Shown one piece after another: positions 1 through 44,330 of a DNA stretch of 47,000 bases (positions are counted from its first letter, which is position 1; every line of letters starts with the position of its first letter). Made by a program: the position numbers and the translations under genes. The notes under the pieces were generated by a model. The model had not been told where the DNA came from, did not search any database, and saw only the letters and a list, made by a program, of their open reading frames with translations. The DNA comes from Takakia lepidozioides (lineage: Eukaryota > Plantae > Bryophyta). The stretch covers positions 1 to 47,000 of the forward strand of contig JAKLZA010000024.1 of NCBI GenBank assembly GCA_030704615.1, written 5' to 3'.

Positions 1-297
1 GACTCGCAGCCGTGAGGACTTGGCGCATTATCTGTTCGGGGAGTCGGCACCGCGAAATGGTGGACGGACCGCTTCGTGGACGTGGAGGCGTAGAAATTTC
101 CGGTGAAATGGGAGAGGGAGAAGCAATATGTGGAGAGAGCTGAGGCACTTGCAAATGCAGGTAGCGAGCGCTGAATTGCAGCGAGGACTGCAGTCACGGA
201 CAAGTTTTGAGTCGACAGGGAGAAATCCGATTTTTTCTTGAATGATCGCACAGCTTTATGTAGACAAGTGTTGGCCACTTGAAGGGGTCAGCGAACG

Positions 298-3200
298 ATG
301 AGAACAGTAGGGATGGGAGGGCATGCCTTGGTGCCCGCAAGCGGGGCGTGCCTGAAGTTGCTGTTGCCTCGCCTCCATTCCCGCCCCGTGGTGTTGGCCA
401 GATTACGTTGGCAAGGACACACCCGGTTACAAATCATAGAGAATGAATGGCGGCAAAGCAATTTAAAGTGGAATAACAGGTATGGCAACAATGCCTGCGC
501 CGATGAGATTGGTACTTGCATCAAGGAGTAATGTAGGTCTTGTGTATGATAACAAGTCGAGTTGTGAGCAGAGGTCTGCACTCCTGGTGACTGGACTGCT
601 CTAAGGTTGTGGTATTGTAAGTTGCGCCACTTGCTGTTATGAGCTACGAGGTGATCTGCTGGTAGCTGGTTTCCATTTTGACGCTTCAGGAGCTGTCTGG
701 AGAGCTTCTGTATTTTATCAGTCATGCACAAGTTTGTCTTCAGTGCAATGCAAATTTAATGCTGAATACATCAGAGCTAGGGGAATTATGGAAGTACAGG
801 TCTGTAGTCTCAAAGTCTGCCAGAGATTGGATGCAGGTCTTGAGCATGAAAACTAGTGCTGTTTTTTATTCCAGTTTCCATATTTTCTTCACAACGGTTT
901 TCATCCAGAAATTTAGGTTTAGGAGCTGCAAATGGTCAGACATAAGTGTTTCAACCACGTCCAGTTGTTGTTGAGAAGTACACATGCTAGAAGTCACTAC
1001 GGCAGCTTTTGTGCAGTTTCAAGCAGCATGCTGAGGCGAGTCTTTGGGCAAGACTTGGCCAGTTTCAATTTGACAATGTCAATTTCCGTCAGTATCATCC
1101 GTCAACTCACCCATTTTGCATCTGATTGTCTTGATAATTTAATCTTGAAACTTGCTGCCACTGTTCTGCCACTTTTCGGATTGCTTATTTACGAAATTTG
1201 GTGATTGTCACCTCAGAAGGCGAAGGATTGTTTGCAACACAAGCTTTTGGCAAGACCCTGGTGTTGAAGTCATTGAGAGTGCATGAGACTCTCCTCTATC
1301 CAAAAGCCAGCATGTTGTTGGCTCTACCACAGTGTTGACAGCTGATTCTGAGGTGAACAATGGGACTGTAAAACCTGAGGGACAAACGACGACTCAGTTC
1401 GGGAGGCTTTATTGCCTACTCTGCAGGTAGTGTACAACAGCTATTCTGAGTGTGTACAAAGTTTTAAATAAGAGATGCTAACAGTATGGCAGATAATCAG
1501 GGGCAAACTTGTTTTGTTATGATGAACATAAAGGCACAGTGCCTGATTTCATCCAAAGTGCTTTCTTGAGTGACTTGGGCTTGTGTTTTATTTACGTTCT
1601 GATCACTTCACTGCACAAATAAGTAGTGCTCCAGGGCAACAGACCATCACAATTCGACAGTAGAAGGGAAGTACAAATGGTGTCTGATTGCGGTAGTAAT
1701 CACAACTCTTTGAAATACCTGGCTCACTTGGTTTAGTCTCAGTTTTTGTTCACTGGCAGAAAAACATGAGGAAACAGTGCTCCAGTGTCTCAGGCCTGCT
1801 CTGCCATTCAAATTGGGTTCCATATGACACCTCTTGATGCATTTGAACTTGTCCTGATTACTTTCATGTCCTTCGGTGTCCTGCACACTTCCAAATTTAG
1901 TACAACTAGGCCTAAAGACCAACCTTTATTGCCAATATCGACCACAATCTGTGGTTGGTGCAGGTGCAATCATTGCAGGAGCAAGAGAAGCTGGCTGCGA
2001 CCCCTGCTCATCCTGAAGGTCTTTATGGTATGCTTGACTTTAGAACTCATCCTTCACTAACATACTGTTGATGGTAGCATACTAGGGCACTGATGTAGTA
2101 TGCGACTGTGGAGGGATTATGGGGCTTATGGGGGTGTCCGGTTGGAATGCTGCCATACCAGCAATGTATCCCACTTTTGTGGCATCGTGCATCATGGAGC
2201 GGGTGTGGCGCTTTGGTTTGCCACTGGTGCTTGCCCAGCTGCACAATAGTCTACTGCCTGTGGCGGTGACCAGCTTTGTTGCCCAGGTAATTTCCTGTCA
2301 TCCTTGTGTTTCCTCTCATACATGTGGCTCTTGGTGTTTGCTGGTTGTGCTTGCATAGTTCAGCCTTCTATGGGAGCTACTTTGCCTCATGCTTTATGGA
2401 GCACACATGGCGTTTTGTCTGTCCTGCTGTCATTGCCCTTCTCCACTGTAGCCTTCTCCCTGTGGCCGTAGTCTGCTTCGTGAGTCAGGTAGGTTTCCTG
2501 TCACTTAGTGAACATGCATCTGATTGGAATTCTGCTAGTTGTGTGATGATGATTATATAATGCACAGATGTTGTTAAAACATTGGTTAGCTCTCCTATCG
2601 TGTGGTTTGGTGTGGCCTTAATTCAGTCCGGAATTTGTATACAAATTATCTGTTGAATATCATAATGAGGAGCCCAATGCATCTGGCACATGTTGGCAGC
2701 TTGTGATATTTGGGGCCCATGGGTGGGAGCACTGATGGATTCTATGCCTAGAGTTGTAGCCTTCAAGACACTGAGTATCGTGCAGGTTTGAACCTATTCG
2801 CCTGTGTGCTCACTATTGATGAATGGCTGTGTGCCTATTCAAAGTACTGTTGTTTTGGTGCTCATTGAAAGACCTTTACTTTGTTAAAAGTTCCAAGAGT
2901 ACACTTCTGATTTGGTTCTCTGTGCTTCTTGTTTATTTGTGGTCAGATAGTTTGCTGCTAACGTCGGCAGGGTGACGGTACATGCGTTAAGTGGAGCTGT
3001 GTCAACCACCACCACAGCAACAATGCTACTGGTTCAGCCACTGGTTTTGGTCTTAGTTGTTGCAGCAGCAGTGGATCGGCTCGCTGGACTTGCAGCCGGC
3101 GTTGCCTTGAGAGAGACTGGGTCGTTCTGGTGAGCTTCTCAATCCTGTTCACCATTTTATTTGTCTGTGGAAACCCTGGTCACAATTGCTATGTACATTG

Positions 3201-5199
3201 TTTTACTCTGCTCTAACATGAGTGGATTGTGCAACTGCAGCTAGCAGGCCCCAATCGCCCCATTGCCTTGGCAAATGCAAATGCCATTTTACGAAGAGTT
3301 GAACTTGTGTGTGAGTTTATTGTGTTTGTGTTTCTGATATTATGTTCTGTCTTTTTCTACGGTGACATTCTGTTTGTCAGATATTTTGTAGCTTCACTAT
3401 GGCTCCATGTTTGCTGCAAGTGTGTCAAAATTGGGTTGACCCCTTATTTTGGTACTTCCTCTTTGACTCTTAGGATTTACAGCCCTCTAGCTGCAGTTTT
3501 ACCCATTCATTATGCCTATTGTGAAGGCGGGCGTGATATGATTCTTCTGAGCATCATGTTGTGTGTGCAGTTATGTCTGGTTCAGACTACCAACAGTGTC
3601 GAAAGGTGCCCCGACCAAAACATATGAGCACCAGGGATGGCAAGGCCAACCATAGTAGCTATGAGTCACAACCTCAAGATGCGTCAATGGAAGGAGGGTT
3701 GCACACGGTCATACGTGGCTGGAAGCAATATCTGGCGCAGCCTGTATTGCCGGCCAGTTTGGGCATATGTGCTCTTGTACTTCAATGCAGTTTTAGCCCC
3801 CGGGACTGATGAGCTTCACACAACAGGGTATGCTTTTCCCTCCAGATGGTTTGTGTATTGCCAAGTAAGCGCATTTAGTTGATGTCTATTTCCCACCTAA
3901 TTCACTTCTGTCTTGAGCTCTGTTTCTTGTAACTGGAAGTGGGAAAGAGGATGGTGCTCTTTTGAGGCTTCTGTAGTTTGTGTGTCAGCTGGATATTTTG
4001 TGCAGTGCTGTGCAAGTTTACTCACATGGCTCTTACTTTTTGCAGAGATAAATCCTTCATTGATTGGGCTGTTCAGAGGAATGTGTGCCCTTGGGATTCT
4101 CAGCAACTTTTCTGTCAGCGAATCTCATCAGCAAGCTTGGGGTCTTGAAGGTGAATATATGGAGTTCCTTGGAACCCTCTTTCCAGCACGGTGATTTACT
4201 CGTAATTGCCAATAGAGTGATAACTGTGGTTTTGTCACCTGTTCTGCTATTCGTAAAGGATCAGGTTGACTACATTCTGCCAGGGAAAAGCAATTTCAAA
4301 TGTAGAGCAATGATGATGTGGGATATAGAGTGAAAGCAAAGCCATGTCCTGTGGCTTTCACGAGTACTTTTCTGTGGTGTTGTGTGTTTCTGTAGGCTGT
4401 AAGATGCGAAACAGTTCCGTTGCTTTGAACAGTCTTTCAAGTCAGTGGATCTGTTTGGAGGTATATGACTGACCCCTTTCTGCCGACAGGCTGGAGCATA
4501 TGCGCTGATATTCCAAGCATCAGTGCTTGCTATGGCGGTTTGGTTTATTTGAGCAATCCCTTGGGTCAGCATGGGTCACTTGTGGTGTTCCTCTTTTTAA
4601 TCGTGAGTGTTTGAACTTCTGCAATACATGTATTTTCCTGTCCAAGGGTGTCTGAAAGTTCCCTTCATTGTTTGGTGCACATTCAATAATGACAGACCCA
4701 ATACATGCTTATTCATGCACCTATGTAACTTGTTTTATTTTTGTCGCAAGAGAAGAGGTAGTGAGCTACAGACCACAGTTGACTAAGCTGTAACATTGAA
4801 TCCTGCATTTAAACTTCTGGAATGTGGGTGATGGAAATGCAGGTAATGTCAAGGTTAGGCTATTGGGCGTATGATATGGTGGATGCCCAGATATTTCAAA
4901 CTGCAATACCAGCTTCGCAAGCAAATCTTGTTGGAACGACAGAGGTGTCATTGGCTAGCTTAGCAGAATTAATGATGTTGGGGGTGGCCATTGTGGCAAA
5001 TGATGTATCATATTTTGGGGGTCTTGCGGCCTTGTCCATGGCGTCCGTGGTAGGGGCTGCTTGGCTTTATTGCCAATGGTTGGCCAAACCCTGTGCTCAC
5101 CAGCGATGCTTGTTCCCTCATGATCCTCACTTCGATGATTCGGAGACAGCAAGACCGTTGGGTATACATGTGTTAGTTCCTACATTTTTCCCTTTGTAA
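298..5199 (+). CDS. IREG3: Ferroportin/SLC40 family, plastid-type IREG3/FPN3/MAR1-like iron transporter (multi-exon)
   Basis: GT-AG exons give LAATPAHPEGLY (1964-2027), SLLPVAV (2162-2286 or 2364-2488), LMDSMPRV (2700-2785), ERDWVVL (to 3129), LAGPNRPIALANANAILRRVELVCE (3241-3315), [29 protein letters not shown], and VMSRLGYWAYDMVDAQIFQTAIPASQANLVGTTEVSLASLAE (4843-). These match IREG3 motifs as I recall them. The basic first exon (298-479) resembles a transit peptide. Several 1-bp indels are present, and the start and exact stop are approximate. Confidence 0.93.
2162..2286 (+). other. IREG3 alternative exon A (TM1-TM2), 125 nt
   Basis: cag|CAATG...GCCCAG|gtaatt, phase 1 in and phase 0 out. 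Encodes (A)MYPTFVASCIMERVWRFGLPLVLAQLHNSLLPVAVTSFVAQ. Confidence 0.85.
2364..2488 (+). other. IREG3 alternative exon B (TM1-TM2), 125 nt
   Basis: cag|CCTTC...AGTCAG|gtaggt, same phases and length as exon A. Encodes (A)FYGSYFASCFMEHTWRFVCPAVIALLHCSLLPVAVVCFVSQ. Confidence 0.88.
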
Positions 5200-5559
5200 T
5201 ATACTGCAGTTAGTCTTAGCCATTTATCAGTGAGAGAGCCATTGTGTGGTTTAACCACCCATTCTTTACACCAAGGGGATCATTCTTTCTTGGTAGTTAT
5301 ATCTACCAACATACACTTTGTAATAGATTAGTAAGAAAAGGATAGGAAATGTGGAAATCTTTGTTCTGGTGGACAATATGTCAAACTGGTGGTGTACGTG
5401 GTCAACAATTTGGAGGGCTCTTCTACTTGAATTGATCGAATAACTTTCTCAATAGTTAGCTTTGAAGAGATTTCACTGCTAATGTGACACAAAGCTTGTT
5501 AAAGAACTTTGTGAGTTGACAAGAGTGGTCTCGAGCGTTGCTGGTGAAGATGGTGGGCA

Positions 5560-6300
5560 CCGTGAGGACTGCAACAAGTGGATGAAGTAAGCCCTGCTGC
5601 AATTTCATATGCTTTCATGAAGACCAGTTCGAAGGTGCAGGGTTCCTTTATACATGTCTAGAAAGTTTTGAAACCAATCTAATGAAGCAGGCAAGGACGC
5701 TAACTTTGAATTACCAGAGGAGCCTCGTGATGTTCATTATTTCTGACACTATTCTGGAAGATCTTGAAGGGAATGTCCAGAAGAACCAGTTCTGTGGACA
5801 TAGAATGAAATAGAGGGTACTTGCTCGCCTGTTGTATGTGTCTATGGACTGATCTCCAAGGACTGTCAATCCTGACCACTGCTCGTACATGCATTATCAT
5901 TGCGGGTACAATTACTGCTCTCCCACTGCTGACATGCTGTCAAAGATGTTAGTCAATTTCTCTAGCTGCGTTTCACTGTATACATTCGCCTCGGCCGTTC
6001 TATAAGATGGACTAGATCAGCTGCTGTATCGAAAGGTATGAGGGTGTCAAGCTGAAGTTTTTCAATTTACGGTCGCTCCATGCTGGTACATAGACTATTG
6101 ACTCTCCAGTGATGTCTGTTTCAAGATTCTTTGTACGATGATTTCTCTCTTGTGCTGTTTGTGGCGGTCCACATGTAAACAATCTACAGCGAAAAACAAT
6201 CTACATCTCCATGGCTAGCCCGAACTGCTGGAAAGGGCATCTGCTGCCTTCTCCAAAATTTGGAACCTGGGGCCTCAGGGAAGGCCTGGCCCTGCATGCC
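5560..6300 (-). mobile_element. Possible degenerate LTR-retrotransposon gag-like remnant
   Basis: Minus-strand fragments such as YEQWSGLTVLGDQSIDTYNRRA and EPCTFELVFMKAYEIA resemble retrotransposon gag segments. The region is interrupted by stops and no LTR pair was found. Confidence 0.3.
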
Positions 6301-6767: not shown

Positions 6768-7377
6768 TCACCAAAGACGATTCCTATGTACAGCAATGGC
6801 CCACTTCATCAGTGATACACATTTCAAAAGAACAAGAAAGCTTACTTGATGAAGTCAGAAAGTCCAGGTATCAGATCCCCATTCGTATATAGCTCATTTT
6901 CTCGAGTCAATTCAGTGAAGAGCTTCGTTGGGGCAAAGGGCTCTAGCTCAAATGCTACTGTGCACCCCTCAATCTGAAAATTTGTACAAAGATGCTGATA
7001 GACAATCAGATCATGAAATATAGAGCATTCCTCTTGTATCTGAAAACAAATCCAAGGTAGGTGGTTTAGAATACCTCTGTTGGCAGGGCGGCTATCCTTA
7101 TCAAACATCAGGTATCTGCCAAGGCAGCTGTTCATAACACATCCTCAACAACACAACCTCCTAAATACTGCCCAAAGCTTCTTAAATGATCTGGACCACC
7201 CTGTACATTAACAGTGAATCCTGTTGGTTATGCAGGAGCATACCTCAATTTTGCAACGAGTTTCAACCTGGACTGGTGGGTACAACCCACAATCAACTCT
7301 TGGAAAAGTCGATACGCCTCAGAGGAAATGCACTCAACATGGCAAACAGTCTCAGGAATGGTGAATGAACCAAGCAG
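6768..7377 (-). pseudogene. 3' exons of an unidentified spliced gene
   Basis: Canonical AG/GT-bounded segments 7377-7244, 7115-7075, 6973-6846 and 6783-6768. With a 1-bp fix in the 7115-7075 exon they read ...[18 protein letters not shown]|IPDVLIRIAALPTE|IEGCTVAFELEPFAPTKLFTELTRENELYTNGDLIPGLSDFIK|NRLW*. Family not recognised. Confidence 0.45.
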
Positions 7378-7419
7378 CTGCATAGTTTTGAGATATGATG
7401 CAAAGACACTCTCGCTTTC

Positions 7420-7833
7420 ACCACAAGAACAAACCTCATCTTGAAATTGGTGAAAACAGTTTGCATCCCGTACAACGATTGCTCGCCCAACAATCTTTGA
7501 GATGAACTTGGTGGTCATGTGGCAGTCACCACACACACAGGAAGGTTCTGAATAACATGGAGAGGCTTCCCAGGGCCGTGCTGATCAGCCCAAAAGCAAT
7601 GGCCAGCATCTCACTGTGGTGGCAAACTGAAATTCCTCGTCCACATCATGCAATGACAAGCCTGGGTGAGGAACGCACACTGCCTCCTTCATCAACTGAG
7701 ACACTCTTGTCAGATCAGCATGAATTTCCTCAATTTGTGGATGCAATTTGTCATCTACCACGAGGGTGTGCACCCTGTTGCCAACCAGCGACCTGGCTAT
7801 GTTTTTTTTTACTTTTTCCATTGCTCTGTACAT
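7420..7833 (-). pseudogene. Orphan, degenerate DYW deaminase-domain fragment
   Basis: NRVHTLVVDDKLHPQIEEIHADL...[15 protein letters not shown]...[39 protein letters not shown]. The terminal DYW tripeptide is missing, the PG box is eroded, and no PPR repeats are visible upstream. Confidence 0.88.
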
Positions 7834-27000: not shown

Positions 27001-28074
27001 GATGTACAAGGTTTCAAACCTTTTCATTGCCTCTATACGGAGATGATAGATGCCTCAGATGCTGGTTCCATCCATACAAACAAAAATAGAAGCAAAGGAT
27101 GTGAGCAGCTCAACCCTGATAAGGGACTTTAAGTTGGGTGAAAATTGCCATCTTTGCTTCATGGGTTTTTGTCTTTGTGTTTTTTACTTTACTAAATGGG
27201 AAGGAGGCCCTGTAACTAATAGTAAAAGGAGATAAGTCCGAGTAACAATTGACCACAATGTGATTGGTAAGAGAAATCAAACAAAACTAAAAAAGGATGG
27301 GCGTATAAATGTCACAGGCTAGGTGTGAGTGAGTGAGTGAGTGCAATAGTGCACGAAACAAAACAACACACGTCTTGTTGAAGACAGTGAGGTTCACAGG
27401 TTGCTACTTAGCTGCCGGGCTGGAAGATGGTGGTGGTGGTGGTGGAGGATCTTCAGGTGTAGGTGCGTTGCTGTTTGTACTGCATTGAGGAGAAGTGCGG
27501 GGGTAATCTGTCTGATGCATGCAGAGCCGAGGAGAAGGATCAAGTCATTCAAGTGTGGCGGAGTGAGGCGGAGAGATTGCTCCCAACTCGGTGATGGCTG
27601 CCCGTCGTCAGCCTGCTCCTGCACCTGGTGGTGGGTCTTTCCCCTCCCGCTGTCAGCTTGGACTGGGTTGCTGAGCTCCGATGCTGCCCTTGCGATGGAC
27701 CTACCACGGGAATCTGAAACCGTAGGCTGGGATTGAGAAACCGCATTGTGTGTAGACAGTTTGATCCCGGTTGCACGGTTCAGGCTGTTGTTGTGTGCGG
27801 AAGCTAGCGACGATGTGTTGGTGCTGGATGGTCATTGTGTTTGATCTGATGTGAGCAAAGGGGCATAATCCATCTGGTTCTGTTGTGGGTCTGTCTGCTG
27901 GCTTATTGTAGCCTCGAGACTAACGGCGACAATGCCCATAGCCGGGGGCACGACTGCAGGGCTTAAGATAAAGCTGAAGCCGACTGGAGTAGCGAAGCTT
28001 GCAAAGGGAAGCCAACGCCAGAGAGTGGCGAGGAGGGCCCTGAGGCTGCAGACAGTGCGGCAAATAAAGGGGGA

Positions 28075-31000
28075 ATGCTGAAGCGGAAACGCACTTCTCC
28101 TCCTGTGTCGCCTGCTCCCAGCAAAAGACCGTCAAGAGAAGACTCTCCCATTCCCTTGGCAGCGAATGGCGAACCTGTGGAGGTTGTCCCTGGCAAGAGT
28201 GAATCTTTGGCCGTAGATCACCAAGTGGTCAAGCAACGGGTAGGCCAGCCCCATGCGTCAGTGGCAGCAGTGTCCATGCAGCAGGCAGTACTAGGAGGGG
28301 TTGAAAGAGAGAGTGAGGAGTCGAAAAAGTCGACACCCAGTATCGAGAACATATCGCATGGGCAGCTGCAGGTGAACTCAGTTACAGCCGGAGGCCAGCA
28401 AGGAGCTTCTCCCTCCACAAGAAAACGAGCTGGTGCCGATCCTTTAGGGTTTGCAGCGAACAGTCCTCTGTCAGATAAGGGGGTAGCCTCAACTTCCCAA
28501 ACTTCCTTGGCTGCGCCAAATACCAGACTGCCGGAGCCCACACAAGTTTTGCATACAATCCCCAGCCATGCAGGTGAGAACAGACTCTAATCATGAACAA
28601 GTATCTCATATGTTGTTGTCTGTTTGGGTTCCTTCATGATGAGTGCTGCCTTATGTTGTGTTGCCAGGCTGGTTTGCATGGACGAAAATACACACGCTGG
28701 AGCGCCGAGGGTTGCCAGAGTTCTTCAATGGAAAATCCAAGACAAAGACACCAGAAATTTACTTGGAGTACAGGAATGCGATACTACGAAAGTATAGGGA
28801 TGACCCACAACAGTTGCTAACCATTGCAGACATGCAAGGGCAGCTTAGCGGTGAAGAGAAAGGAGTACAGCGCATCATAGAATTCTTGGACCACTGGGTC
28901 TCTCATAAATTACCAGGTGCCTGCAGATTGGCTTCCTGTGTGGAAAGGCCGGTCTCCTAGTGTAGAGGAGGATGTGTCAGGCATGCTGCGAGCTGTGCCA
29001 CAAACTGGAGCGAGCTTGTACCAGTTTGATGCACCTCGTGCCCCTGTGCCCAGGCATAGCACTGTCAACCCCCAGTCAATAGATAATATTATCTCAGAAG
29101 TTCTTGCCGAGCCTGATGGATCTTCAGTTGAGTATCACTGCAATTCCTGCTCTGCTGACTGCTCCAAGCAACGTTATCATTGCCAGAAGCAGGTCTGTTC
29201 CCAACTTACCTCATTATCACCAAATTAGGGTTAGGTCGAAATTTGGGTATGAAGATGTGTGATGTTGCCAGTTTTGCAAAGCATTGTTGCAAACATGCCT
29301 CAATGGCACATTTATGTTATGCTGTCTGTGCTCATGGACTGGTCACCTTTTGTCATTTAGGGGACGGCATACTGACCTGCTTGGAAGAGTTGAACAGAGT
29401 AACCCAGTGAGTGCACAGTAGTTAGGGCCTTCTGGAGAGCCGCTCCTTTGACCTAGGTGTGGATTTTTTTGATCTCTGCCCAGACTGTTACAACGATGGG
29501 AAGTTTGGGCCCGACATGGTGTCTACAGATTTCATGAGGATGGATGCTTTTACAGAGGCAGCCAATGCAAATGGTGGGGGTTGGACAGACCAGGAAACCC
29601 TACTGCTGCTGGAGGCACTGGAGATTTATGGTGACAACTGGAATGAAATTGCAGAGCATGTGGCTACCAAATCCAAGTCTCAGTGCATTCTGCATTTTAT
29701 CCGTCTGCCCGTTGAGGACCCTTTCTTGGAAGAGATGGAGACTCCTGGCACTGCACTCACTGCCCCCTCTTCACCTCCAAAACAACTACGGCCAGCCTTT
29801 TGCAAGGAGAGCATAAGGTGGAGTCCTCGTTAGATAAGAGCTCTGTCACAGACAAGGGGAAGGAACTCAGTGGCAAGGTTGCTGCTGAGGCTACCAACGG
29901 AGTATCCGCATCACACAGTCCTGTACCATTCGCAGATGCTGGCAACCCCCCGTTATGGCCCAGGTGTGTATTGGAGTCATAAATTTGCTGTGGATGTTTC
30001 ACCCTTGTATACTTTCCTTTCCTGATGGGTAGTGTACTCACGAGCTTCCTAGATAGCCACTTCATCAGGTACAGGACATTGGTTTTACATAACTTTGCTA
30101 GTTGTTTGGCATACTCTGAAATGCTCGTGGGGATACCCCAAACTTGCTTGTTTGATCAGGTGTCTGTTGAGTTTTGTAGGTTGCATTTCTTGCCGCTATG
30201 GTTGGGCCCGTGTAGCTGCAGCTGCAGCACAGGCCAGCATTGGCAGTGCTGTCAGATAAGATCCTGCACCTCGCCTGGCCGCAGGCTGCAATCACTTTGG
30301 ATGTCTCAGGTCGAAGCCAACTCACAAAGTGGTTTTCCTGACAGGTTTTTAGCCTATCACCTCTTACTGCTGAGCTCGATCATATCATTAGCTTTACCAT
30401 GCAGCACAGCCGTAAATATGGGAGTTTTTTAACCTATTCCTCGGTCCAGCTTTTGCTCCCACTAGCTTTGAAAGGGATGGCTTCCTGTTGGGTCCCGAGT
30501 GCTAAGATGGCATTGATTCTGCCATGAAGTGTTTTTGCCACCCAAACAAGTTGTTGGAAGTTTTTTGACCTGTCCAAGTTAATTAGTACCAGGGGACATT
30601 CAGCTAGGGACTTTGTAGTCCTCAACTAGACCCAAACAGTATGGTCCTTCTACATGTGGTCCATGTTATATTGAAACAGAATTCTCAAGCACGGAATGTC
30701 TGAAAGTCAATGATCCAGTTCATTGCACCAGTTCACTTGTTGTGTTGGACCTGTTCATGGCTCAATGAGTTGCAATCTGGGCTTAGATTGCCAGCTATGT
30801 AAGCTGGTGTTAGATATGTTTCCTTGTGTGTATCTTTGATCCATTGGTTGGTGACTTTGTTGCACACATATGTAAGGCAAGTTCCAACTGGTTGCGATGT
30901 TGAAGTTGGCAGGGTAGTCCAATCAAATGCGGAGTTGCAAAGTGGGGTTGAGGCCCCAAGCTAGGCAGTGGTGAATCTGCTTCGGCAGGGATGACGTTGC

Positions 31001-31956
31001 CTGCGTCAGACACTGATGCAGCTTCGAAGAAAGATGTGGAGGTTACGGGTGGAGAGGGAAACTCTGGTAATTCTTGAACCTATAACCAGCTTTTGACCGA
31101 GCACTTGTCAATGTAAGGCCTGAGGAAATGTGGTTGTGATTGACCTTCCTCCCTAAGCAGGGGTTTAGATGGCACTTGCAGGTAGGATGGTGCTCAGAGG
31201 TTGGAGGACCGCAGTTTGACATGCAGAGGACCCCTTGGTTCAACCCGTGTGAAGCAGGCGGCAGCCGCTGCATTAGCAGCTGCTGCTGTGAAGGCGAAAC
31301 TGCTGGCTGATCGGGGCGTGAGATGCAGCGTCTGGTCACAACAGTCATTGAGCACCAGGTCTTGACACTTCTTGCACTGCACTGCAGTGTGTATTGATTG
31401 TTTACCAAAATGGGTTTTACTCCCAAGAGTTGAGCTGGATTTTGTTAAGGTGAGTTGTTGAGAGCACGAGTCACTGCAGTTTTGTTCAATGGAAGCCTTC
31501 AGTTCTCACAGTAACTGTGGCCCATATGCTGGGAATGTGGCAGTTTAAAAAGCTGGAGCTGAAATTAAAGACCTGTAACGACTTGGAGATGATGCTGGCA
31601 AAGGAGTGTGAGCAAGTGGAACGTGCAAGGCAGAAAGTGTATGCAGAGCATGCACGCATGGCTGCGTCACGACTTGGCACAGCTTCTAGTAGTGCCTTGC
31701 CAGGGCAGGGCCCCAGTAGCTGCACCTAGGCTGTGTTCACCTTTGGACCAGGTGGGGTGCCACACCTGTGTCTGCGTCTCTTCCCGGCATAGGCAGAGGT
31801 TCTACTGGGGCATCCTCAGTACTAGTATGCCGATGCTTCACCTGCTAGTCAATTAACGTCATCTCAGGTCTTCCTAGATCAGGCACTCCGACACTACCTC
31901 AAGGGTTTTCAAGGTCTGTTATAGGAGGCGGCATTTCAGGCATTGCACCACAGTAA
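28075..31956 (+). CDS. SWI3D: SWI/SNF chromatin-remodelling subunit SWI3D-like (SWIRM, ZZ zinc finger, SANT, coiled coil)
   Basis: IPSHA|GWFAWTKIHTLERRGLPEFFNGKS...FLDHW (SWIRM), EYHCNSCSADCSKQRYHCQKQ|..DLCPDCY (ZZ), WTDQETLLLLEALEIYGDNWNEIAEHVATKSKSQCILHFIRLP (SANT), PFADAGNP, AALAAAAVKAKLLAD and KKLELKL. The ZZ domain points to the SWI3D clade. The stop is approximate. Confidence 0.93.
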
Positions 31957-34478: not shown

Positions 34479-36770
34479 GTCCTGGGGTCTCAGGTCTGCA
34501 GTCACACACGGGCATTTGGTGGGAATCAGAGAAGTGGCAAGGGTTTGAGGCTTGGAACGGCCACCATTGCCACTGCTTGTAGTGGCGAGCGGGAAACAGC
34601 TCCGAAAAGGGAAGGGAGCCACCAGGCGATTTCTAGGAGTAGAGTGGATGTGAGCACAGTGTGCAAGGAGGGACGATGGACGGGCAGTGCAGCTCTTGGA
34701 TCTGATGGAGCAACGAGGCTTTTGGCATACTCCGCAACATGTGCTCGTCTCCTGCAGGGTTATGGAAAGACGAAGGCCCTGGCAGATGGAAAGCGTGTCC
34801 ATGCCCACATAATCAAAAGTGAATTTGCAGGAAACCAATTCCTGGGAAACTCGGTTGTCAGCATGTACTGCAAGTGCGGGAGTGTGGAGGATGCTCGCCA
34901 AGTGTTTGACAAAATGCCTGAACGTAATATAGTCTCATGGACTGCGATGATTGCAGGATTAGCTAAGCAAGGGCATGGCGGAAAGGCATTCGACCTGTTT
35001 TGGCAAATGCAACGAGAAGGCCTGGAGCCAACAAGGTCACATTCATGAGCATCCTGAGTGCATGTGCCAGCCCACTGGCTGGAACAAGGCAAACGGCTCC
35101 ATGCCGACATCGTTGAGGCTGGACTGGAGTCGCTGGACTTGGAGTTTAGAGGTAGAAGTGGGAAACGCCTTGTCAGCATGTATTGCAAGTGCGGGAGTGT
35201 GGTTGAGGCTCGGCAAGTGTTTGACCAGATGCCGAAGCGAGATGTGATCTCATGGAATGCGATGATTGCAGGCTTATCTCAGCAAGGGCACGGTGCAGAG
35301 GCATTGGAAGTCTTTTCAGATGCAACGAGAAGGGCGTCAGGGCAAACAACGTCACTTGCATCGGCATTCTCAATGCATGTGCTACCCCAGCAGCTCTGGA
35401 ACAAGGCAAGCGGCTCCATGCGGGCATAATCAAAGCTGGATTTGACTCGGATGTCCGAGGGGGGACTACCCTTGTCACTATGTATTGTAGGTGCGGAAGT
35501 GTGGTGGATGCACGCGGAGTATTCTTTAAGATGCCACAGCGAGATGTGGTGTCATGGAATGCGATGATTGGAGGGTGCTAACATGGTGTGAGTGGGAGGC
35601 CTTGGAACTCTTTCGGCAGATGCAACTAGAGGGAGTGAAACCAAACAAGGTCACTTTCATTAGCATCCTCGGTGCATGCGCCAGCCTAGCAGTCCTGGAA
35701 GAGGGCAGGAGGGTCCATGTCCGCATCATCGAATCTGGATGTGAGGCAGATGTCTTTGTGGGGAGTGCCCTTGTCGACATGTATTCCAAATGCGGGAGTG
35801 TGGAGGATGCGAGACAAGTGTTCGACAAAGTTTTCAAAAAAGAAGTGGTCTTGTGGAATGCGATGATTATAGGATATGCCCAGCACGGGCATGGGAAGGA
35901 GGCTCTCCAACTCTTTGGACAGATGGATCGGGAAGGAGTGAAGCCTGATGAGGTCACATTTATTGGTGTTCTCTCTGCATGCAGCCATGTGGGTTTAGTG
36001 GCTGAAGGCATATCACTTCCTATCTATGAGTCAAGATCATGGCTTGGAAACCAACTAAAAAGCACTATATGGATGCATGGTTGACCTTCTTGGTCGTGCA
36101 GGACGCCTGAATGAAGCAGAGGACTTGATGAAAAAAATGCCATTTGAACCAGATGCTCCAATGTGGGGAGCTTGCTTAGTGCCTGCAGACTCCATGGGAT
36201 ATATGCAACTAGCGGAGCGTGCTGCAGAATGTTTCTTGAGCTGGAACCAGAAGATTCTGCAGTGTATGTGCTGCTTTCAAACATCTATCTTTGGGTGGTA
36301 AATGGGATGATGTAGCAAAGGTGCGGAAAACAATGCATGAAAGAGGTGTGAAAAAGGAGTTAGGGCGCAGCTGGTTGAGGTTGAGAACAGGATACATACG
36401 TTTCTTGTAGAAGATAGATCACACCCACAAACAAAGGGTATCTATGCAGAGTTGGACAGATTGACTAGGGAGATGAAGGAGGCAGGTTATGTTCCTGACA
36501 CACGCTTTGTATTATATGAGGTGGATCAACATCAAAAAGGAATTAGCTCTCTGCCACCACAGTGAAAAGCTGGCCATTGCTTTCGGCTCATTAGCACTCC
36601 CCCTGGGACACCCATCCGTGTTATCAAGAACCTTAGAGTATGTGGTGATTGCCACACTGCAACCAAGTTCATATCCAAGATTGTTGGGCGGGAAATTGTT
36701 ACAAGGGATGCCAGCCGCTTTCATCACTTTAAGAATGGGGGTGTGTTCTTGTGGAGATTATTGGTTTTGA
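34479..36770 (+). CDS. PLS-class PPR protein with E1/E2/DYW domains (organellar C-to-U editing factor), copy 1
   Basis: L-S-P triplets ([25 protein letters not shown]), P2-L2-S2, [17 protein letters not shown] and CSCGDYWF*. Multiple 1-bp indels. A probable upstream intron at 34337-34478 leaves the start unresolved. Confidence 0.93.
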
Positions 36771-39070: not shown

Positions 39071-41491
39071 ATGGTCATCATACAGCGGTCCGGTTTCAAG
39101 TTTGGAATCATCTCGGTAGGATGGATCAATCAGGATGTGATGTTACAACTGGGGTGGAAATTCCTCCCTGGAAATGGGCAACAGAGTGAGGCATTGACCC
39201 TTTCGGCTGACGTGGATCACGCAGGGTGGTGGGGTTTCAATTGTGGAATCAGACCGAATTACTTGCTGGGCATCAGAGTCTGGGCCTGGGCACGCCCTCA
39301 ATCATTCTTGCTTCTAATGGAGAGCAAAGATGTGATGGAGATGGACACCACGAGTACATTTGTGGAATTAGTGGGAATATGAGCACAGTATTCAAGGAAG
39401 GACGATTGAAGGAGGCAGTGCACAATCTGGATCTCGTGGAGCACCAGGGCTTTCGGACATATTCCAATATCTGTGCTCGTCTCTTGCAGGGCTATGGTAA
39501 GATGAAGGCCTTGGCAGATGGCAAAGGCGTCCACGCCCACATCATCAAAAGTGGATTCCAGCCTGACGCTTTCCTTGGAAATACTCTAGTGTGCATGTAT
39601 GTGAAGTGCGGAAGTGTTGTGGATGCCCGCAGAGTGTTCGATAGCATGCCTAAGCGAGATGTGATCTCATGGAATACCATGATTGCAGGATTGGCTCAGC
39701 AAGGGCACGGGGAAGATGCCTTTAAACTCTACAGGCAAATGCAAAAGGAAGGCATGAATCCTGATGAGATCACTTTTCATCAGCATCCTTAAAGCGTGTG
39801 TGAGCCCTGCAGATCTGGAACAGGGCAAGCAGGTCCATGCTGGCATCATGGAAGCCGGATTAGGGTCGGCTGTCCGAGTGGGGACTGCTCTTGTCAGCAT
39901 GTATTGCAAGTGTGGGAGCGTGATGACTGCACGCCAAGTGTTTGATTGCATGCCTAAACGAGATGTGGTATCATGGAATGCAGTGATTGGAGGATCTGCT
40001 CAGCATGGCCATGGTGAGGAGGCTTTTGAACTTTTACAGCAAATGCAAAGAGCAGGCATGAAGGCAGACAGGATCACTTTCATGAGCATCCTCAACGCAT
40101 GCGCTAACCCAGCTGCACTGGAACAAGGCAAGCGGCTTCATGCAGACATCATTAAAGCTCAATTTGAATCAGATATCCGAGTAGGGACTGCCCTTGTCAG
40201 CATGTATTGCAAGTGTGGGAGTGTGGTGGATGCATGCCAAGTGTTTGACAGAATGGTTAAGCGAGATGTGGTCTCATGGACTGCTATGATCACAGGATTA
40301 GCTCAGCATGGTCATGGTGATGGGGCCTTGGACCTCTTCTGGCAGATGCAAAGAGAAAGCATGCAGCCTGACAAGGTCACTTTTATTAGCATCATCAATG
40401 CATGTGCCAGCGTAGGCATCCTGGAAGAGGGCAAGAGTGTCCACAGTCATACCAGAAAATTTGGCTTTGAGTCAGATATCCGAGTGCAAAATGCCCTCAT
40501 TGACATGTATTGCAAATGTGGCAGTCTGGGTGATGCACAGGGAGTGTTTGACAGAACTCTTGAACGAGACATCATCTCATGGACTGTAATGATCACTGGA
40601 TTTGCCCAGCATGGGTGTGGTAAGGAGGCCCTGCAACTCTTTGAACAGATGCAATGGGACGGCGTGAAAGCCAGATGATTTACATTGGTTGGTGTCCTCT
40701 CTGCATGCAACCATGCGGGCCTAGTGCATGAAGGTCGTCACTACCTGCATTCAATGATTCAACAGCATGGCATCACACCAACACGTGAGCACTATGGCTG
40801 TCTAGTTGACCTTCTTGGTCGCGCAGGGCACTTGGATGAGGCAGAAGACCTTCTCGATAAAATGCCCTTTAAGCCAGATGCTCCAATCTGGGGTGCCTTG
40901 CTTGGTGCCTGTAGAATCCACGGCAATGTTAGGCTGGCAGAGCGTGCTGCAGAATGTGTTCTCAAATTAGAACCACAAAATGCTTCAGTCCACGTGCTAC
41001 TGTCAAACATCTATGCTGTTGCAGGCAGATGGAATGATGTAGCAAAGATCAGGAAAATGATGGAGAACAGAGGCATGAAAAAGGAGCCAGGGCGCAGCTG
41101 GATTGTGGTTAATAGTAGAGTACATGCCTTTGGTGCAGAAGATAAATCACACCACAAACAGAGGAGATCTATACTGAGTTGCAGAGACTAAATCAACAAA
41201 TGGGGGAGGCAGGATATGTGCCTGACACAAGCTTCGTCTTACATGATGGATCAGCATCAGAAGGAACAGGCTCTCTGCTACCATAGTGAAAAGCTTGCCA
41301 TTGCTTTTGGGCTCATCAGCATACCCCATGGGACACCTATCCGCATAATCAAGAATCTTCGGGTGTGTGGTGATTGCCACACGGCCGCAAAGTTCATATC
41401 CAATATTTTGGACGTGAAAATTATTGCAAGGGATGCTAATCGCTTTCATCACTTCAAAATGGGGGTGTGTTCTTGTGGAGATTACTGGTGA
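39071..41491 (+). CDS. PLS-class PPR protein with E1/E2/DYW domains, copy 2
   Basis: Same architecture as copy 1. PG box [28 protein letters not shown] and CSCGDYW*. A few 1-bp indels; start codon uncertain. Confidence 0.95.

Positions 41492-42273: not shown

Positions 42274-44330
<2,057 letters not shown>

What the first reader, a model, noticed from the sequence alone, without database searches (positions are those of the whole stretch)
2162..2488. Candidate mutually exclusive exon pair swapping the metal-binding helix of a plant ferroportin
Seen: two tandem homologous exons (2162-2286, 2364-2488), both exactly 125 nt, both phase 1 to phase 0, both with AG/GT borders, stop-free and 25/42 aa identical. 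Either one joins exon 1964-2027 to exon 2700 in frame. Including both, or retaining the 77-nt intron between them, breaks the frame. In the shared SLLPVAV block, 5 of 7 codons differ only at silent third positions, which points to an old duplication with purifying selection on both copies rather than an assembly echo. Established: this segment aligns with TM1-TM2 of ferroportin (human GD39R40MWH43F...NSLL), where D39/H43 form a metal site, and mutually exclusive splicing is uncommon in plants. Inference: one gene makes two transporters, A with MERVWRF and 1 Cys, B with MEHTWRF and 4 Cys. They may differ in metal selectivity, redox sensitivity or gating. I do not know of a description of this for IREG3, but I cannot search the literature.
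Basis: partly seen in the sequence, partly recalled or inferred. Interest (0 to 1): 0.9.

Follow-up and report, generated by a model that had tools for sequence, protein, structure and literature searches.

The report
Ancient swappable exon in plant ferroportin
A moss gene for the chloroplast and mitochondrial iron exporter FPN3 carries two alternative copies of the exon for its first membrane helix; mosses and a spikemoss have kept both, while ferns split them into two genes and seed plants kept only one.

Summary
Confirmed. Exons A (2162-2286) and B (2364-2488) are 125-nt tandem copies in a moss FPN3/IREG3/MAR1 gene. Short-read DNA contigs hold both; one RNA contig from this species splices A and skips B. 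B was not seen in this species' RNA (contigs only). The same A-B pair occurs in Ceratodon, Physcomitrium, Sphagnum and Selaginella, with dN/dS 0.30 or less. In three of these, equal-length annotated isoforms differ only inside this exon, and spliced RNA contigs carry A or B. Trees favour one duplication before mosses and vascular plants split. Ferns have an A-only and a B-only gene; seed plants kept B; liverworts have A. Corrections: one of B's four Cys is an assembly error and the Cys difference is not conserved; the H43 position is Arg in both copies here. The fixed switch is Arg (A) versus His (B) at human Arg40, partner of Asp181. Exclusivity most likely comes from a branch point 31-43 nt from A's donor plus a frameshift if both are kept (inferred). 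A conserved RNA duplex was not supported. No paper found; the isoforms sit unremarked in automated annotations. The scan noted five other candidate exon pairs in this genome (unchecked).

The parts
298..479 (+). First coding exon of the FPN3/IREG3/MAR1 gene, probable start codon at 298, transit-peptide-like N-terminus
   Evidence: RNA joint 479>1217; frame continuous to exon 1964 with the read-corrected length of exon 2; transit peptide is inference from composition and orthology
1217..1426 (+). Second exon (window letters carry about 10 indel errors)
   Evidence: RNA contigs X5 and X6
1964..2027 (+). Constitutive exon upstream of the pair (ends ATPAHPEGLY, phase 1)
2125..2161 (+). Conserved acceptor region of exon A with branch-point-like CTTAT 34 nt before the exon; G-rich
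   Evidence: 18/19 identical to Ceratodon at -22..-4 versus 5-10/19 for five other acceptors; motif
2162..2286 (+). Exon A: most of TM1, loop, start of TM2; ERVWRF; Arg at human R40
   Evidence: spliced in RNA contig X5; orthologous A exons; helices
2287..2363 (+). 77-nt intron between A and B; its only branch-point-like motif (CTCAT, A at 2318) lies 32 nt from A's donor
   Evidence: acceptor 14/19 identical to Ceratodon
2364..2488 (+). Exon B: alternative copy; EHTWRF; His at human R40; base 2422 is G in short reads (Trp)
   Evidence: in DNA contigs X2 and X3; dN/dS 0.08-0.24 to orthologous B exons; used in RNA of related mosses
2700..2785 (+). Constitutive exon downstream of the pair (LVIFAGGPW; window lacks 4 nt near 2713)
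   Evidence: Pfam FPN1 55-78, weak
2947..3129 (+). Exon ending in FERDWVVL, which holds the Asp matching human D181, the partner of R40
4843..5316 (+). Last exon (C-terminal helices and 3' UTR)
   Evidence: Pfam FPN1 362-430, E 3e-17; RNA

Best explanation
A and B are mutually exclusive homologous exons made by one tandem exon duplication in the FPN3 gene before mosses and vascular plants split. Each mRNA takes one copy, giving two equal-length organellar ferroportins that differ only in TM1 and the start of TM2. SHOWN: conservation, selection, either-or isoforms in relatives, A use here. INFERRED for splicing: B's branch point lies too close to A's donor (31-43 nt in mosses) for A to be spliced to B, so the upstream donor picks A's or B's acceptor; rare A+B or skip-both products shift the frame (125 nt) and would be degraded; conserved acceptor sequences set the ratio. 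INFERRED for the protein: A keeps Arg at human R40 and can form the R40-D181 salt bridge next to metal site S1; B puts His there (Gln in most fern B genes and seed plants), with Phe replacing Val seven residues earlier on the same helix face, which should change gating, proton coupling or metal handling. In vascular plants the gene later duplicated and each copy kept one exon; seed plants kept only the B gene.
For: Genomic A-B pair in Ceratodon, Physcomitrium, Sphagnum-like contigs and Selaginella, same order, length and phases, introns 55-95 nt. Same-length isoform pairs differing only inside the exon: Ceratodon (two strains), Physcomitrium, Selaginella (two haplotypes). RNA: A here; Physcomitrium full-length B and A proteins on 23 and 2 Logan contigs of about 3 kb; a Sphagnum-like contig with the upstream exon joined straight to B. 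dN/dS 0.30 or less for both exons. Eight columns separate all six A from all six B exons. AU tests reject a moss-only duplication (p 0.006) and one clade of vascular exons (p 0.0095). Tree without the exon: fern B genes plus seed plants 100/99, one fern clade rejected at p 0.0006; fern A and B genes each have a single exon and no relic. Branch-point spacing is under the roughly 50-nt limit cited in PMC7969005. Residue register; R40-D181 bridge and R40Q disease allele in PMC13702422.
Against: No B-containing RNA seen in this species (one informative contig). B here has 7 lineage-specific amino-acid changes against 6 silent ones (A: 3 and 10; Fisher p 0.23). Branch points are predicted, not mapped, and the steric limit comes from vertebrates; Selaginella splices 47-56 nt introns normally and has an annotated in-frame A+intron+B form. 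The exon tree has 41 columns: the A/B split has 83/46 support, a separate Selaginella duplication is not rejected (p 0.085), and a single euphyllophyte exon is rejected only marginally (p 0.03; 0.13 without Psilotum). No transport data.
Confidence: 0.8

Rival explanations
1. The pair is a true switch in other mosses, but in this species B is rarely or never included and is starting to drift.
For: Only A in RNA contig X5; more lineage-specific replacements in B, two of them to Cys.
Against: Open frame, intact splice sites, conserved acceptor, dN/dS 0.12-0.24 to other moss B exons; contigs drop minor forms; A/B difference not significant.
Confidence: 0.1
2. Mosses and Selaginella duplicated the exon independently and converged on His; fern paralogs diverged after an ordinary gene duplication.
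For: Separate Selaginella duplication not rejected (p 0.085); algal single exons show both Lys/Arg and His at the key site, so the change can recur; Riccia and Diphasiastrum have one exon.
Against: Same order and eight shared diagnostic columns; moss-only duplication rejected; one vascular exon clade rejected.
Confidence: 0.12
3. Exclusivity is set by competing RNA helices (docking and selector type) around exon A.
For: G-rich sequence before A and C/U-rich sequence after it; helices predicted in this species and Physcomitrium; conserved intron flanks.
Against: Duplex energies no better than shuffles (z -1.1 to +1.0); consensus fold has an unfavourable covariation term (+3.7); predicted helices differ between species.
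Confidence: 0.12
4. Assembly artefact or pseudogene.
For: The window gene has many frameshifts.
Against: Short-read DNA and RNA contigs correct the listed frameshifts and hold both exons; silent divergence; conservation across species.
Confidence: 0.01

Closest known systems
Animal mutually exclusive homologous exons with a branch point near the upstream donor (OGDH exons 4a/4b, PMC7969005)
   Same: Tandem copies of equal length, short conserved intervening intron, predicted branch point under about 50 nt from the donor, swap of a ligand-handling segment in an organellar protein.
   Different: Plant gene; branch point only predicted; function of the swap untested; OGDH swaps a calcium-binding motif.
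Splice-isoform separation after gene duplication in vertebrates (Abascal 2015, PMC4494069)
   Same: Each paralog keeps one ancestral homologous exon; very old exon pair.
   Different: Here in vascular plants (fern A and B genes), followed by loss of the A gene in seed plants; I found no plant case in the searches run.
Arabidopsis FPN3/IREG3/MAR1 (bioRxiv 10.1101/2020.07.15.203646)
   Same: Ortholog; Glu at D39 and Asp at D181; N-terminal extension; ferroportin fold.
   Different: Seed-plant proteins found all carry a B-type segment (EQxWNF); that paper does not mention isoforms, splicing or mosses.
Predicted Arabidopsis mutually exclusive exons (Kassiopeia, PMC3923563)
   Same: Same criteria: similar length, frame, splice sites, homology.
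   Different: Those 99 internal candidates were predictions and none was annotated as such; this pair has cross-species conservation and RNA support.

Membership tests
Mutually exclusive homologous exons | Neighbouring homologous exons of equal length and phase with canonical splice sites | tested here: met
Mutually exclusive homologous exons | Each exon is found alone in spliced transcripts | tested here: met
   A here; A and B in Physcomitrium RNA contigs and annotations, B in a Sphagnum-like contig. B not seen in this species.
Mutually exclusive homologous exons | Both-included and both-skipped mRNAs are absent or rare | not testable with these tools
   Only assembled contigs were available; Selaginella has an annotated intron-retaining form with both
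Mutually exclusive homologous exons | Both copies conserved under purifying selection | tested here: met
   dN/dS 0.30 or less
Steric (donor-proximal branch point) exclusion | Branch point under about 50 nt from the upstream donor | tested here: inconclusive
   Only consensus-like motif at 31-43 nt in five moss loci; not mapped; Selaginella ambiguous
RNA-structure (docking/selector) exclusion | Conserved long-range pairing with compensatory changes | tested here: not met
   (few sequences)
FPN3/IREG3/MAR1 (SLC40) | FPN1 domain and ferroportin fold | tested here: met
   Pfam; Ceratodon ortholog model matches human ferroportin, E 8e-16
FPN3/IREG3/MAR1 (SLC40) | Orthology to annotated chloroplastic SLC40 member 3 | tested here: met
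   last exon 85-87% identical to moss members; names
FPN3/IREG3/MAR1 (SLC40) | Organellar location and iron export | not testable with these tools
   Shown for Arabidopsis in the cited preprint; inferred here

The most novel reading that the evidence does not exclude
Early land plants tuned organellar iron export with a regulated splice switch between two functionally different ferroportins (Arg versus His at the R40 position), kept as splicing in mosses and Selaginella, turned into two genes in ferns and reduced to one in seed plants; it would be one example of a wider, overlooked set of ancient homologous exon switches in seed-free plants.
Probability: 0.45. Interest if true: 0.85.

Novelty: new variant of a known kind. 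Interest (0 to 1): 0.72.

Why it matters
Mutually exclusive splicing of duplicated exons is regarded as an animal trait and nearly absent from plants. A pair shared by mosses and a lycophyte is, from general knowledge of land-plant dates, more than 450 million years old, and its later split into fern paralogs gives a plant case of splice forms becoming separate genes. For iron biology it is a natural two-state experiment at a position whose change causes human ferroportin disease (R40Q), and it suggests that Arabidopsis FPN3 (Gln there) is only one of two ancestral forms. Physcomitrium allows exon-specific knock-outs, so the question is directly testable.

Tried and rejected
Redox switch through Cys: rejected. 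Swap of the D39/H43 pair in this species: rejected. Conserved RNA duplex: not supported. Assembly echo or pseudogene: rejected. Relic second exon in Riccia, Diphasiastrum, Ceratopteris (A gene), Adiantum (B gene) and Closterium: none by protein or DNA profile. Logan proteins P0166 (A) and P0194 (B) differ at 53 sites across the protein, so they are not counted as one gene's isoforms. Exon A alone found no solved structure. First metagenome scan attempt failed for lack of a conserved stretch and was rerun with B exons only. Genomic look-ups failed for four proteins, so no seed-plant locus was inspected; hornwort, Isoetes, Chara and Klebsormidium were not identified among the hits. Ten paper searches found no description; the library lacks most subscription journals.

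Full report
Observation. The two exons are as described: 125 nt, AG and GT borders, phase 1 to 0, 60% identical in DNA, 25/42 in protein, 77 nt apart. Both match the start of Pfam FPN1. Short-read DNA contigs span both in one piece. They also show that the window is an error-rich assembly (29 gaps in 3.3 kb), which explains the frameshifts in the rest of the gene, and that base 2422 is G, turning one Cys of B into the Trp found in other B exons. The organism is a moss: last exon 85-87% identical to Physcomitrium, Ceratodon and Sphagnum, and about equally distant from them at silent sites, which suggests an early-branching lineage (inference).

Expression here. RNA contig X5, from another sample, splices 479>1217, 1426>1964, 2027>2162 and 2286>2700, so A is used and B skipped. 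X6 does not cover the pair. No raw reads were available, so B use in this species is neither shown nor excluded.

Relatives. The tandem pair is present in Ceratodon (69-nt intron), Physcomitrium (68), Sphagnum-like metagenome contigs (87-95) and Selaginella moellendorffii (55), always A then B. Equal-length annotated isoforms differ at 17-23 residues, all inside the exon, in Ceratodon, Physcomitrium and Selaginella. These annotations are automated and I did not see their reads, but the Physcomitrium B and A proteins are also encoded whole on 23 and 2 Logan contigs of about 3 kb, too short to hold the introns, and contig L008 joins the upstream exon directly to B. Both exons have dN/dS of 0.30 or less in all comparisons. 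The cassette with its intron is 79.5% identical to Ceratodon over 361 nt, more than the last exon (73%), and the two acceptors are far better conserved than the others.

History. Eight columns separate all six A exons from all six B exons, three of them nearly or fully fixed (Val/Phe at 6, Arg/His at 13, Val/Thr at 14). The exon tree splits A from B with weak branch support (83/46); AU tests reject a moss-only duplication (p 0.006) and a single clade of vascular exons (p 0.0095) but not a separate Selaginella duplication (p 0.085). Ferns have two genes, one with an A-type and one with a B-type segment; the Ceratopteris A gene and the Adiantum B gene each have one exon and no relic. On the protein downstream of the exon, fern B genes group with seed plants (100/99) and a single fern clade is rejected (p 0.0006), so the gene duplicated before ferns and seed plants split, and seed plants lost the A gene. 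That the fern exons descend from ancestral A and B is the best tree but only marginally tested (p 0.03; 0.13 without Psilotum). Liverworts and Diphasiastrum have one A-like exon. Zygnematophyceae show both Lys and His at the key site and Closterium has one exon, so an origin earlier than land plants is open.

Splicing mechanism. In mosses the A-B intron is the shortest in the gene (68-95 nt against 104 or more in Ceratodon and Physcomitrium), and its only usable branch-point-like motif is 31-43 nt from A's donor, below the roughly 50-nt limit for joint U1 and U2 binding cited for vertebrates (PMC7969005). Joining A to B shifts the frame. I put steric block plus decay of frameshifted products at about 65% for mosses; it is weaker for Selaginella, which splices 47-56 nt introns and has an annotated in-frame retention form. 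A conserved RNA duplex was tested three ways and not supported.

Protein consequence. In a model of the Ceratodon ortholog (pLDDT mostly 80-95 in this region) the exon covers residues 145-185: most of TM1, the loop and the start of TM2; the fold is ferroportin. The profile alignment puts the invariant Glu on human D39, the next residue on R40 and the residue after Trp on H43. Both copies here have Arg at the H43 position, so the human S1 pair is not swapped in this species; Sphagnum and Selaginella B do have His there. The fixed difference is Arg (A) versus His (B) at R40. [quoted passage not shown] So A can keep the bridge and B replaces it with a titratable, metal-binding side chain. A change in gating, proton coupling or selectivity is my inference, at about 55%; nothing here measures it.

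Novelty. The mechanism class is known from animals, including separation into paralogs (PMC4494069). In Arabidopsis such exons were predicted but none of the internal candidates was annotated (PMC3923563). I found no paper on this pair; the FPN3 preprint does not mention splicing. The isoforms are visible in public automated annotations. Five unchecked first-reader notes report other tandem exon pairs in this genome; they are leads only. Verdict: real, ancient, apparently undescribed variant of a known kind; interest 0.72.

Noticed in passing
window 1-5600: High indel error rate against short reads (29 gaps in 4-3315, 38 in 3445-5600); window 3316-3444 (129 nt) is replaced by 214 other letters in the DNA contigs. 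Apparent frameshifts and pseudogenes in this genome should be treated with caution.
   Followed up: yes
window 2191: RNA contig X5 (another sample) has G for A in exon A (Ile to Val), probably an allele; X2 and X3 match the window.
   Followed up: partly
L003 1538-1842 (Selaginella): The 55-nt intron plus 125-nt exon is 180 nt, so retention keeps the frame; RefSeq lists a 634-aa form with both TM1 segments.
   Followed up: partly
L008 1181-1487: Partly spliced Sphagnum-like transcript: upstream exon joined to B, intron after B retained, next intron removed; Ceratodon and Physcomitrium also have annotated short forms starting in that intron. Suggests slow removal of the intron after B.
   Followed up: no
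P0237, P0245 (Physcomitrium): Two further Physcomitrium FPN3 genes appear only with B-type segments (one on 245 contigs); whether they lost exon A was not checked.
   Followed up: partly
window 7231-7786 (-), 34629-36765 and 39358-41489 (+): DYW-type PPR genes: a DYW domain on the minus strand just downstream of FPN3 and two tandem PPR-DYW genes 74% identical.
   Followed up: partly
window 27967-31726 and 42690-43265 (+): A Myb/SANT-domain gene that looks like SWI3 (inference from sequence) and ribosomal protein L10e.
   Followed up: partly
P0168, P0041, P0170 (fern A-type genes): The fern A-type FPN3 clade sits on a long branch (0.88) and has no seed-plant counterpart among the hits; an unstudied transporter lineage.
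   Followed up: partly
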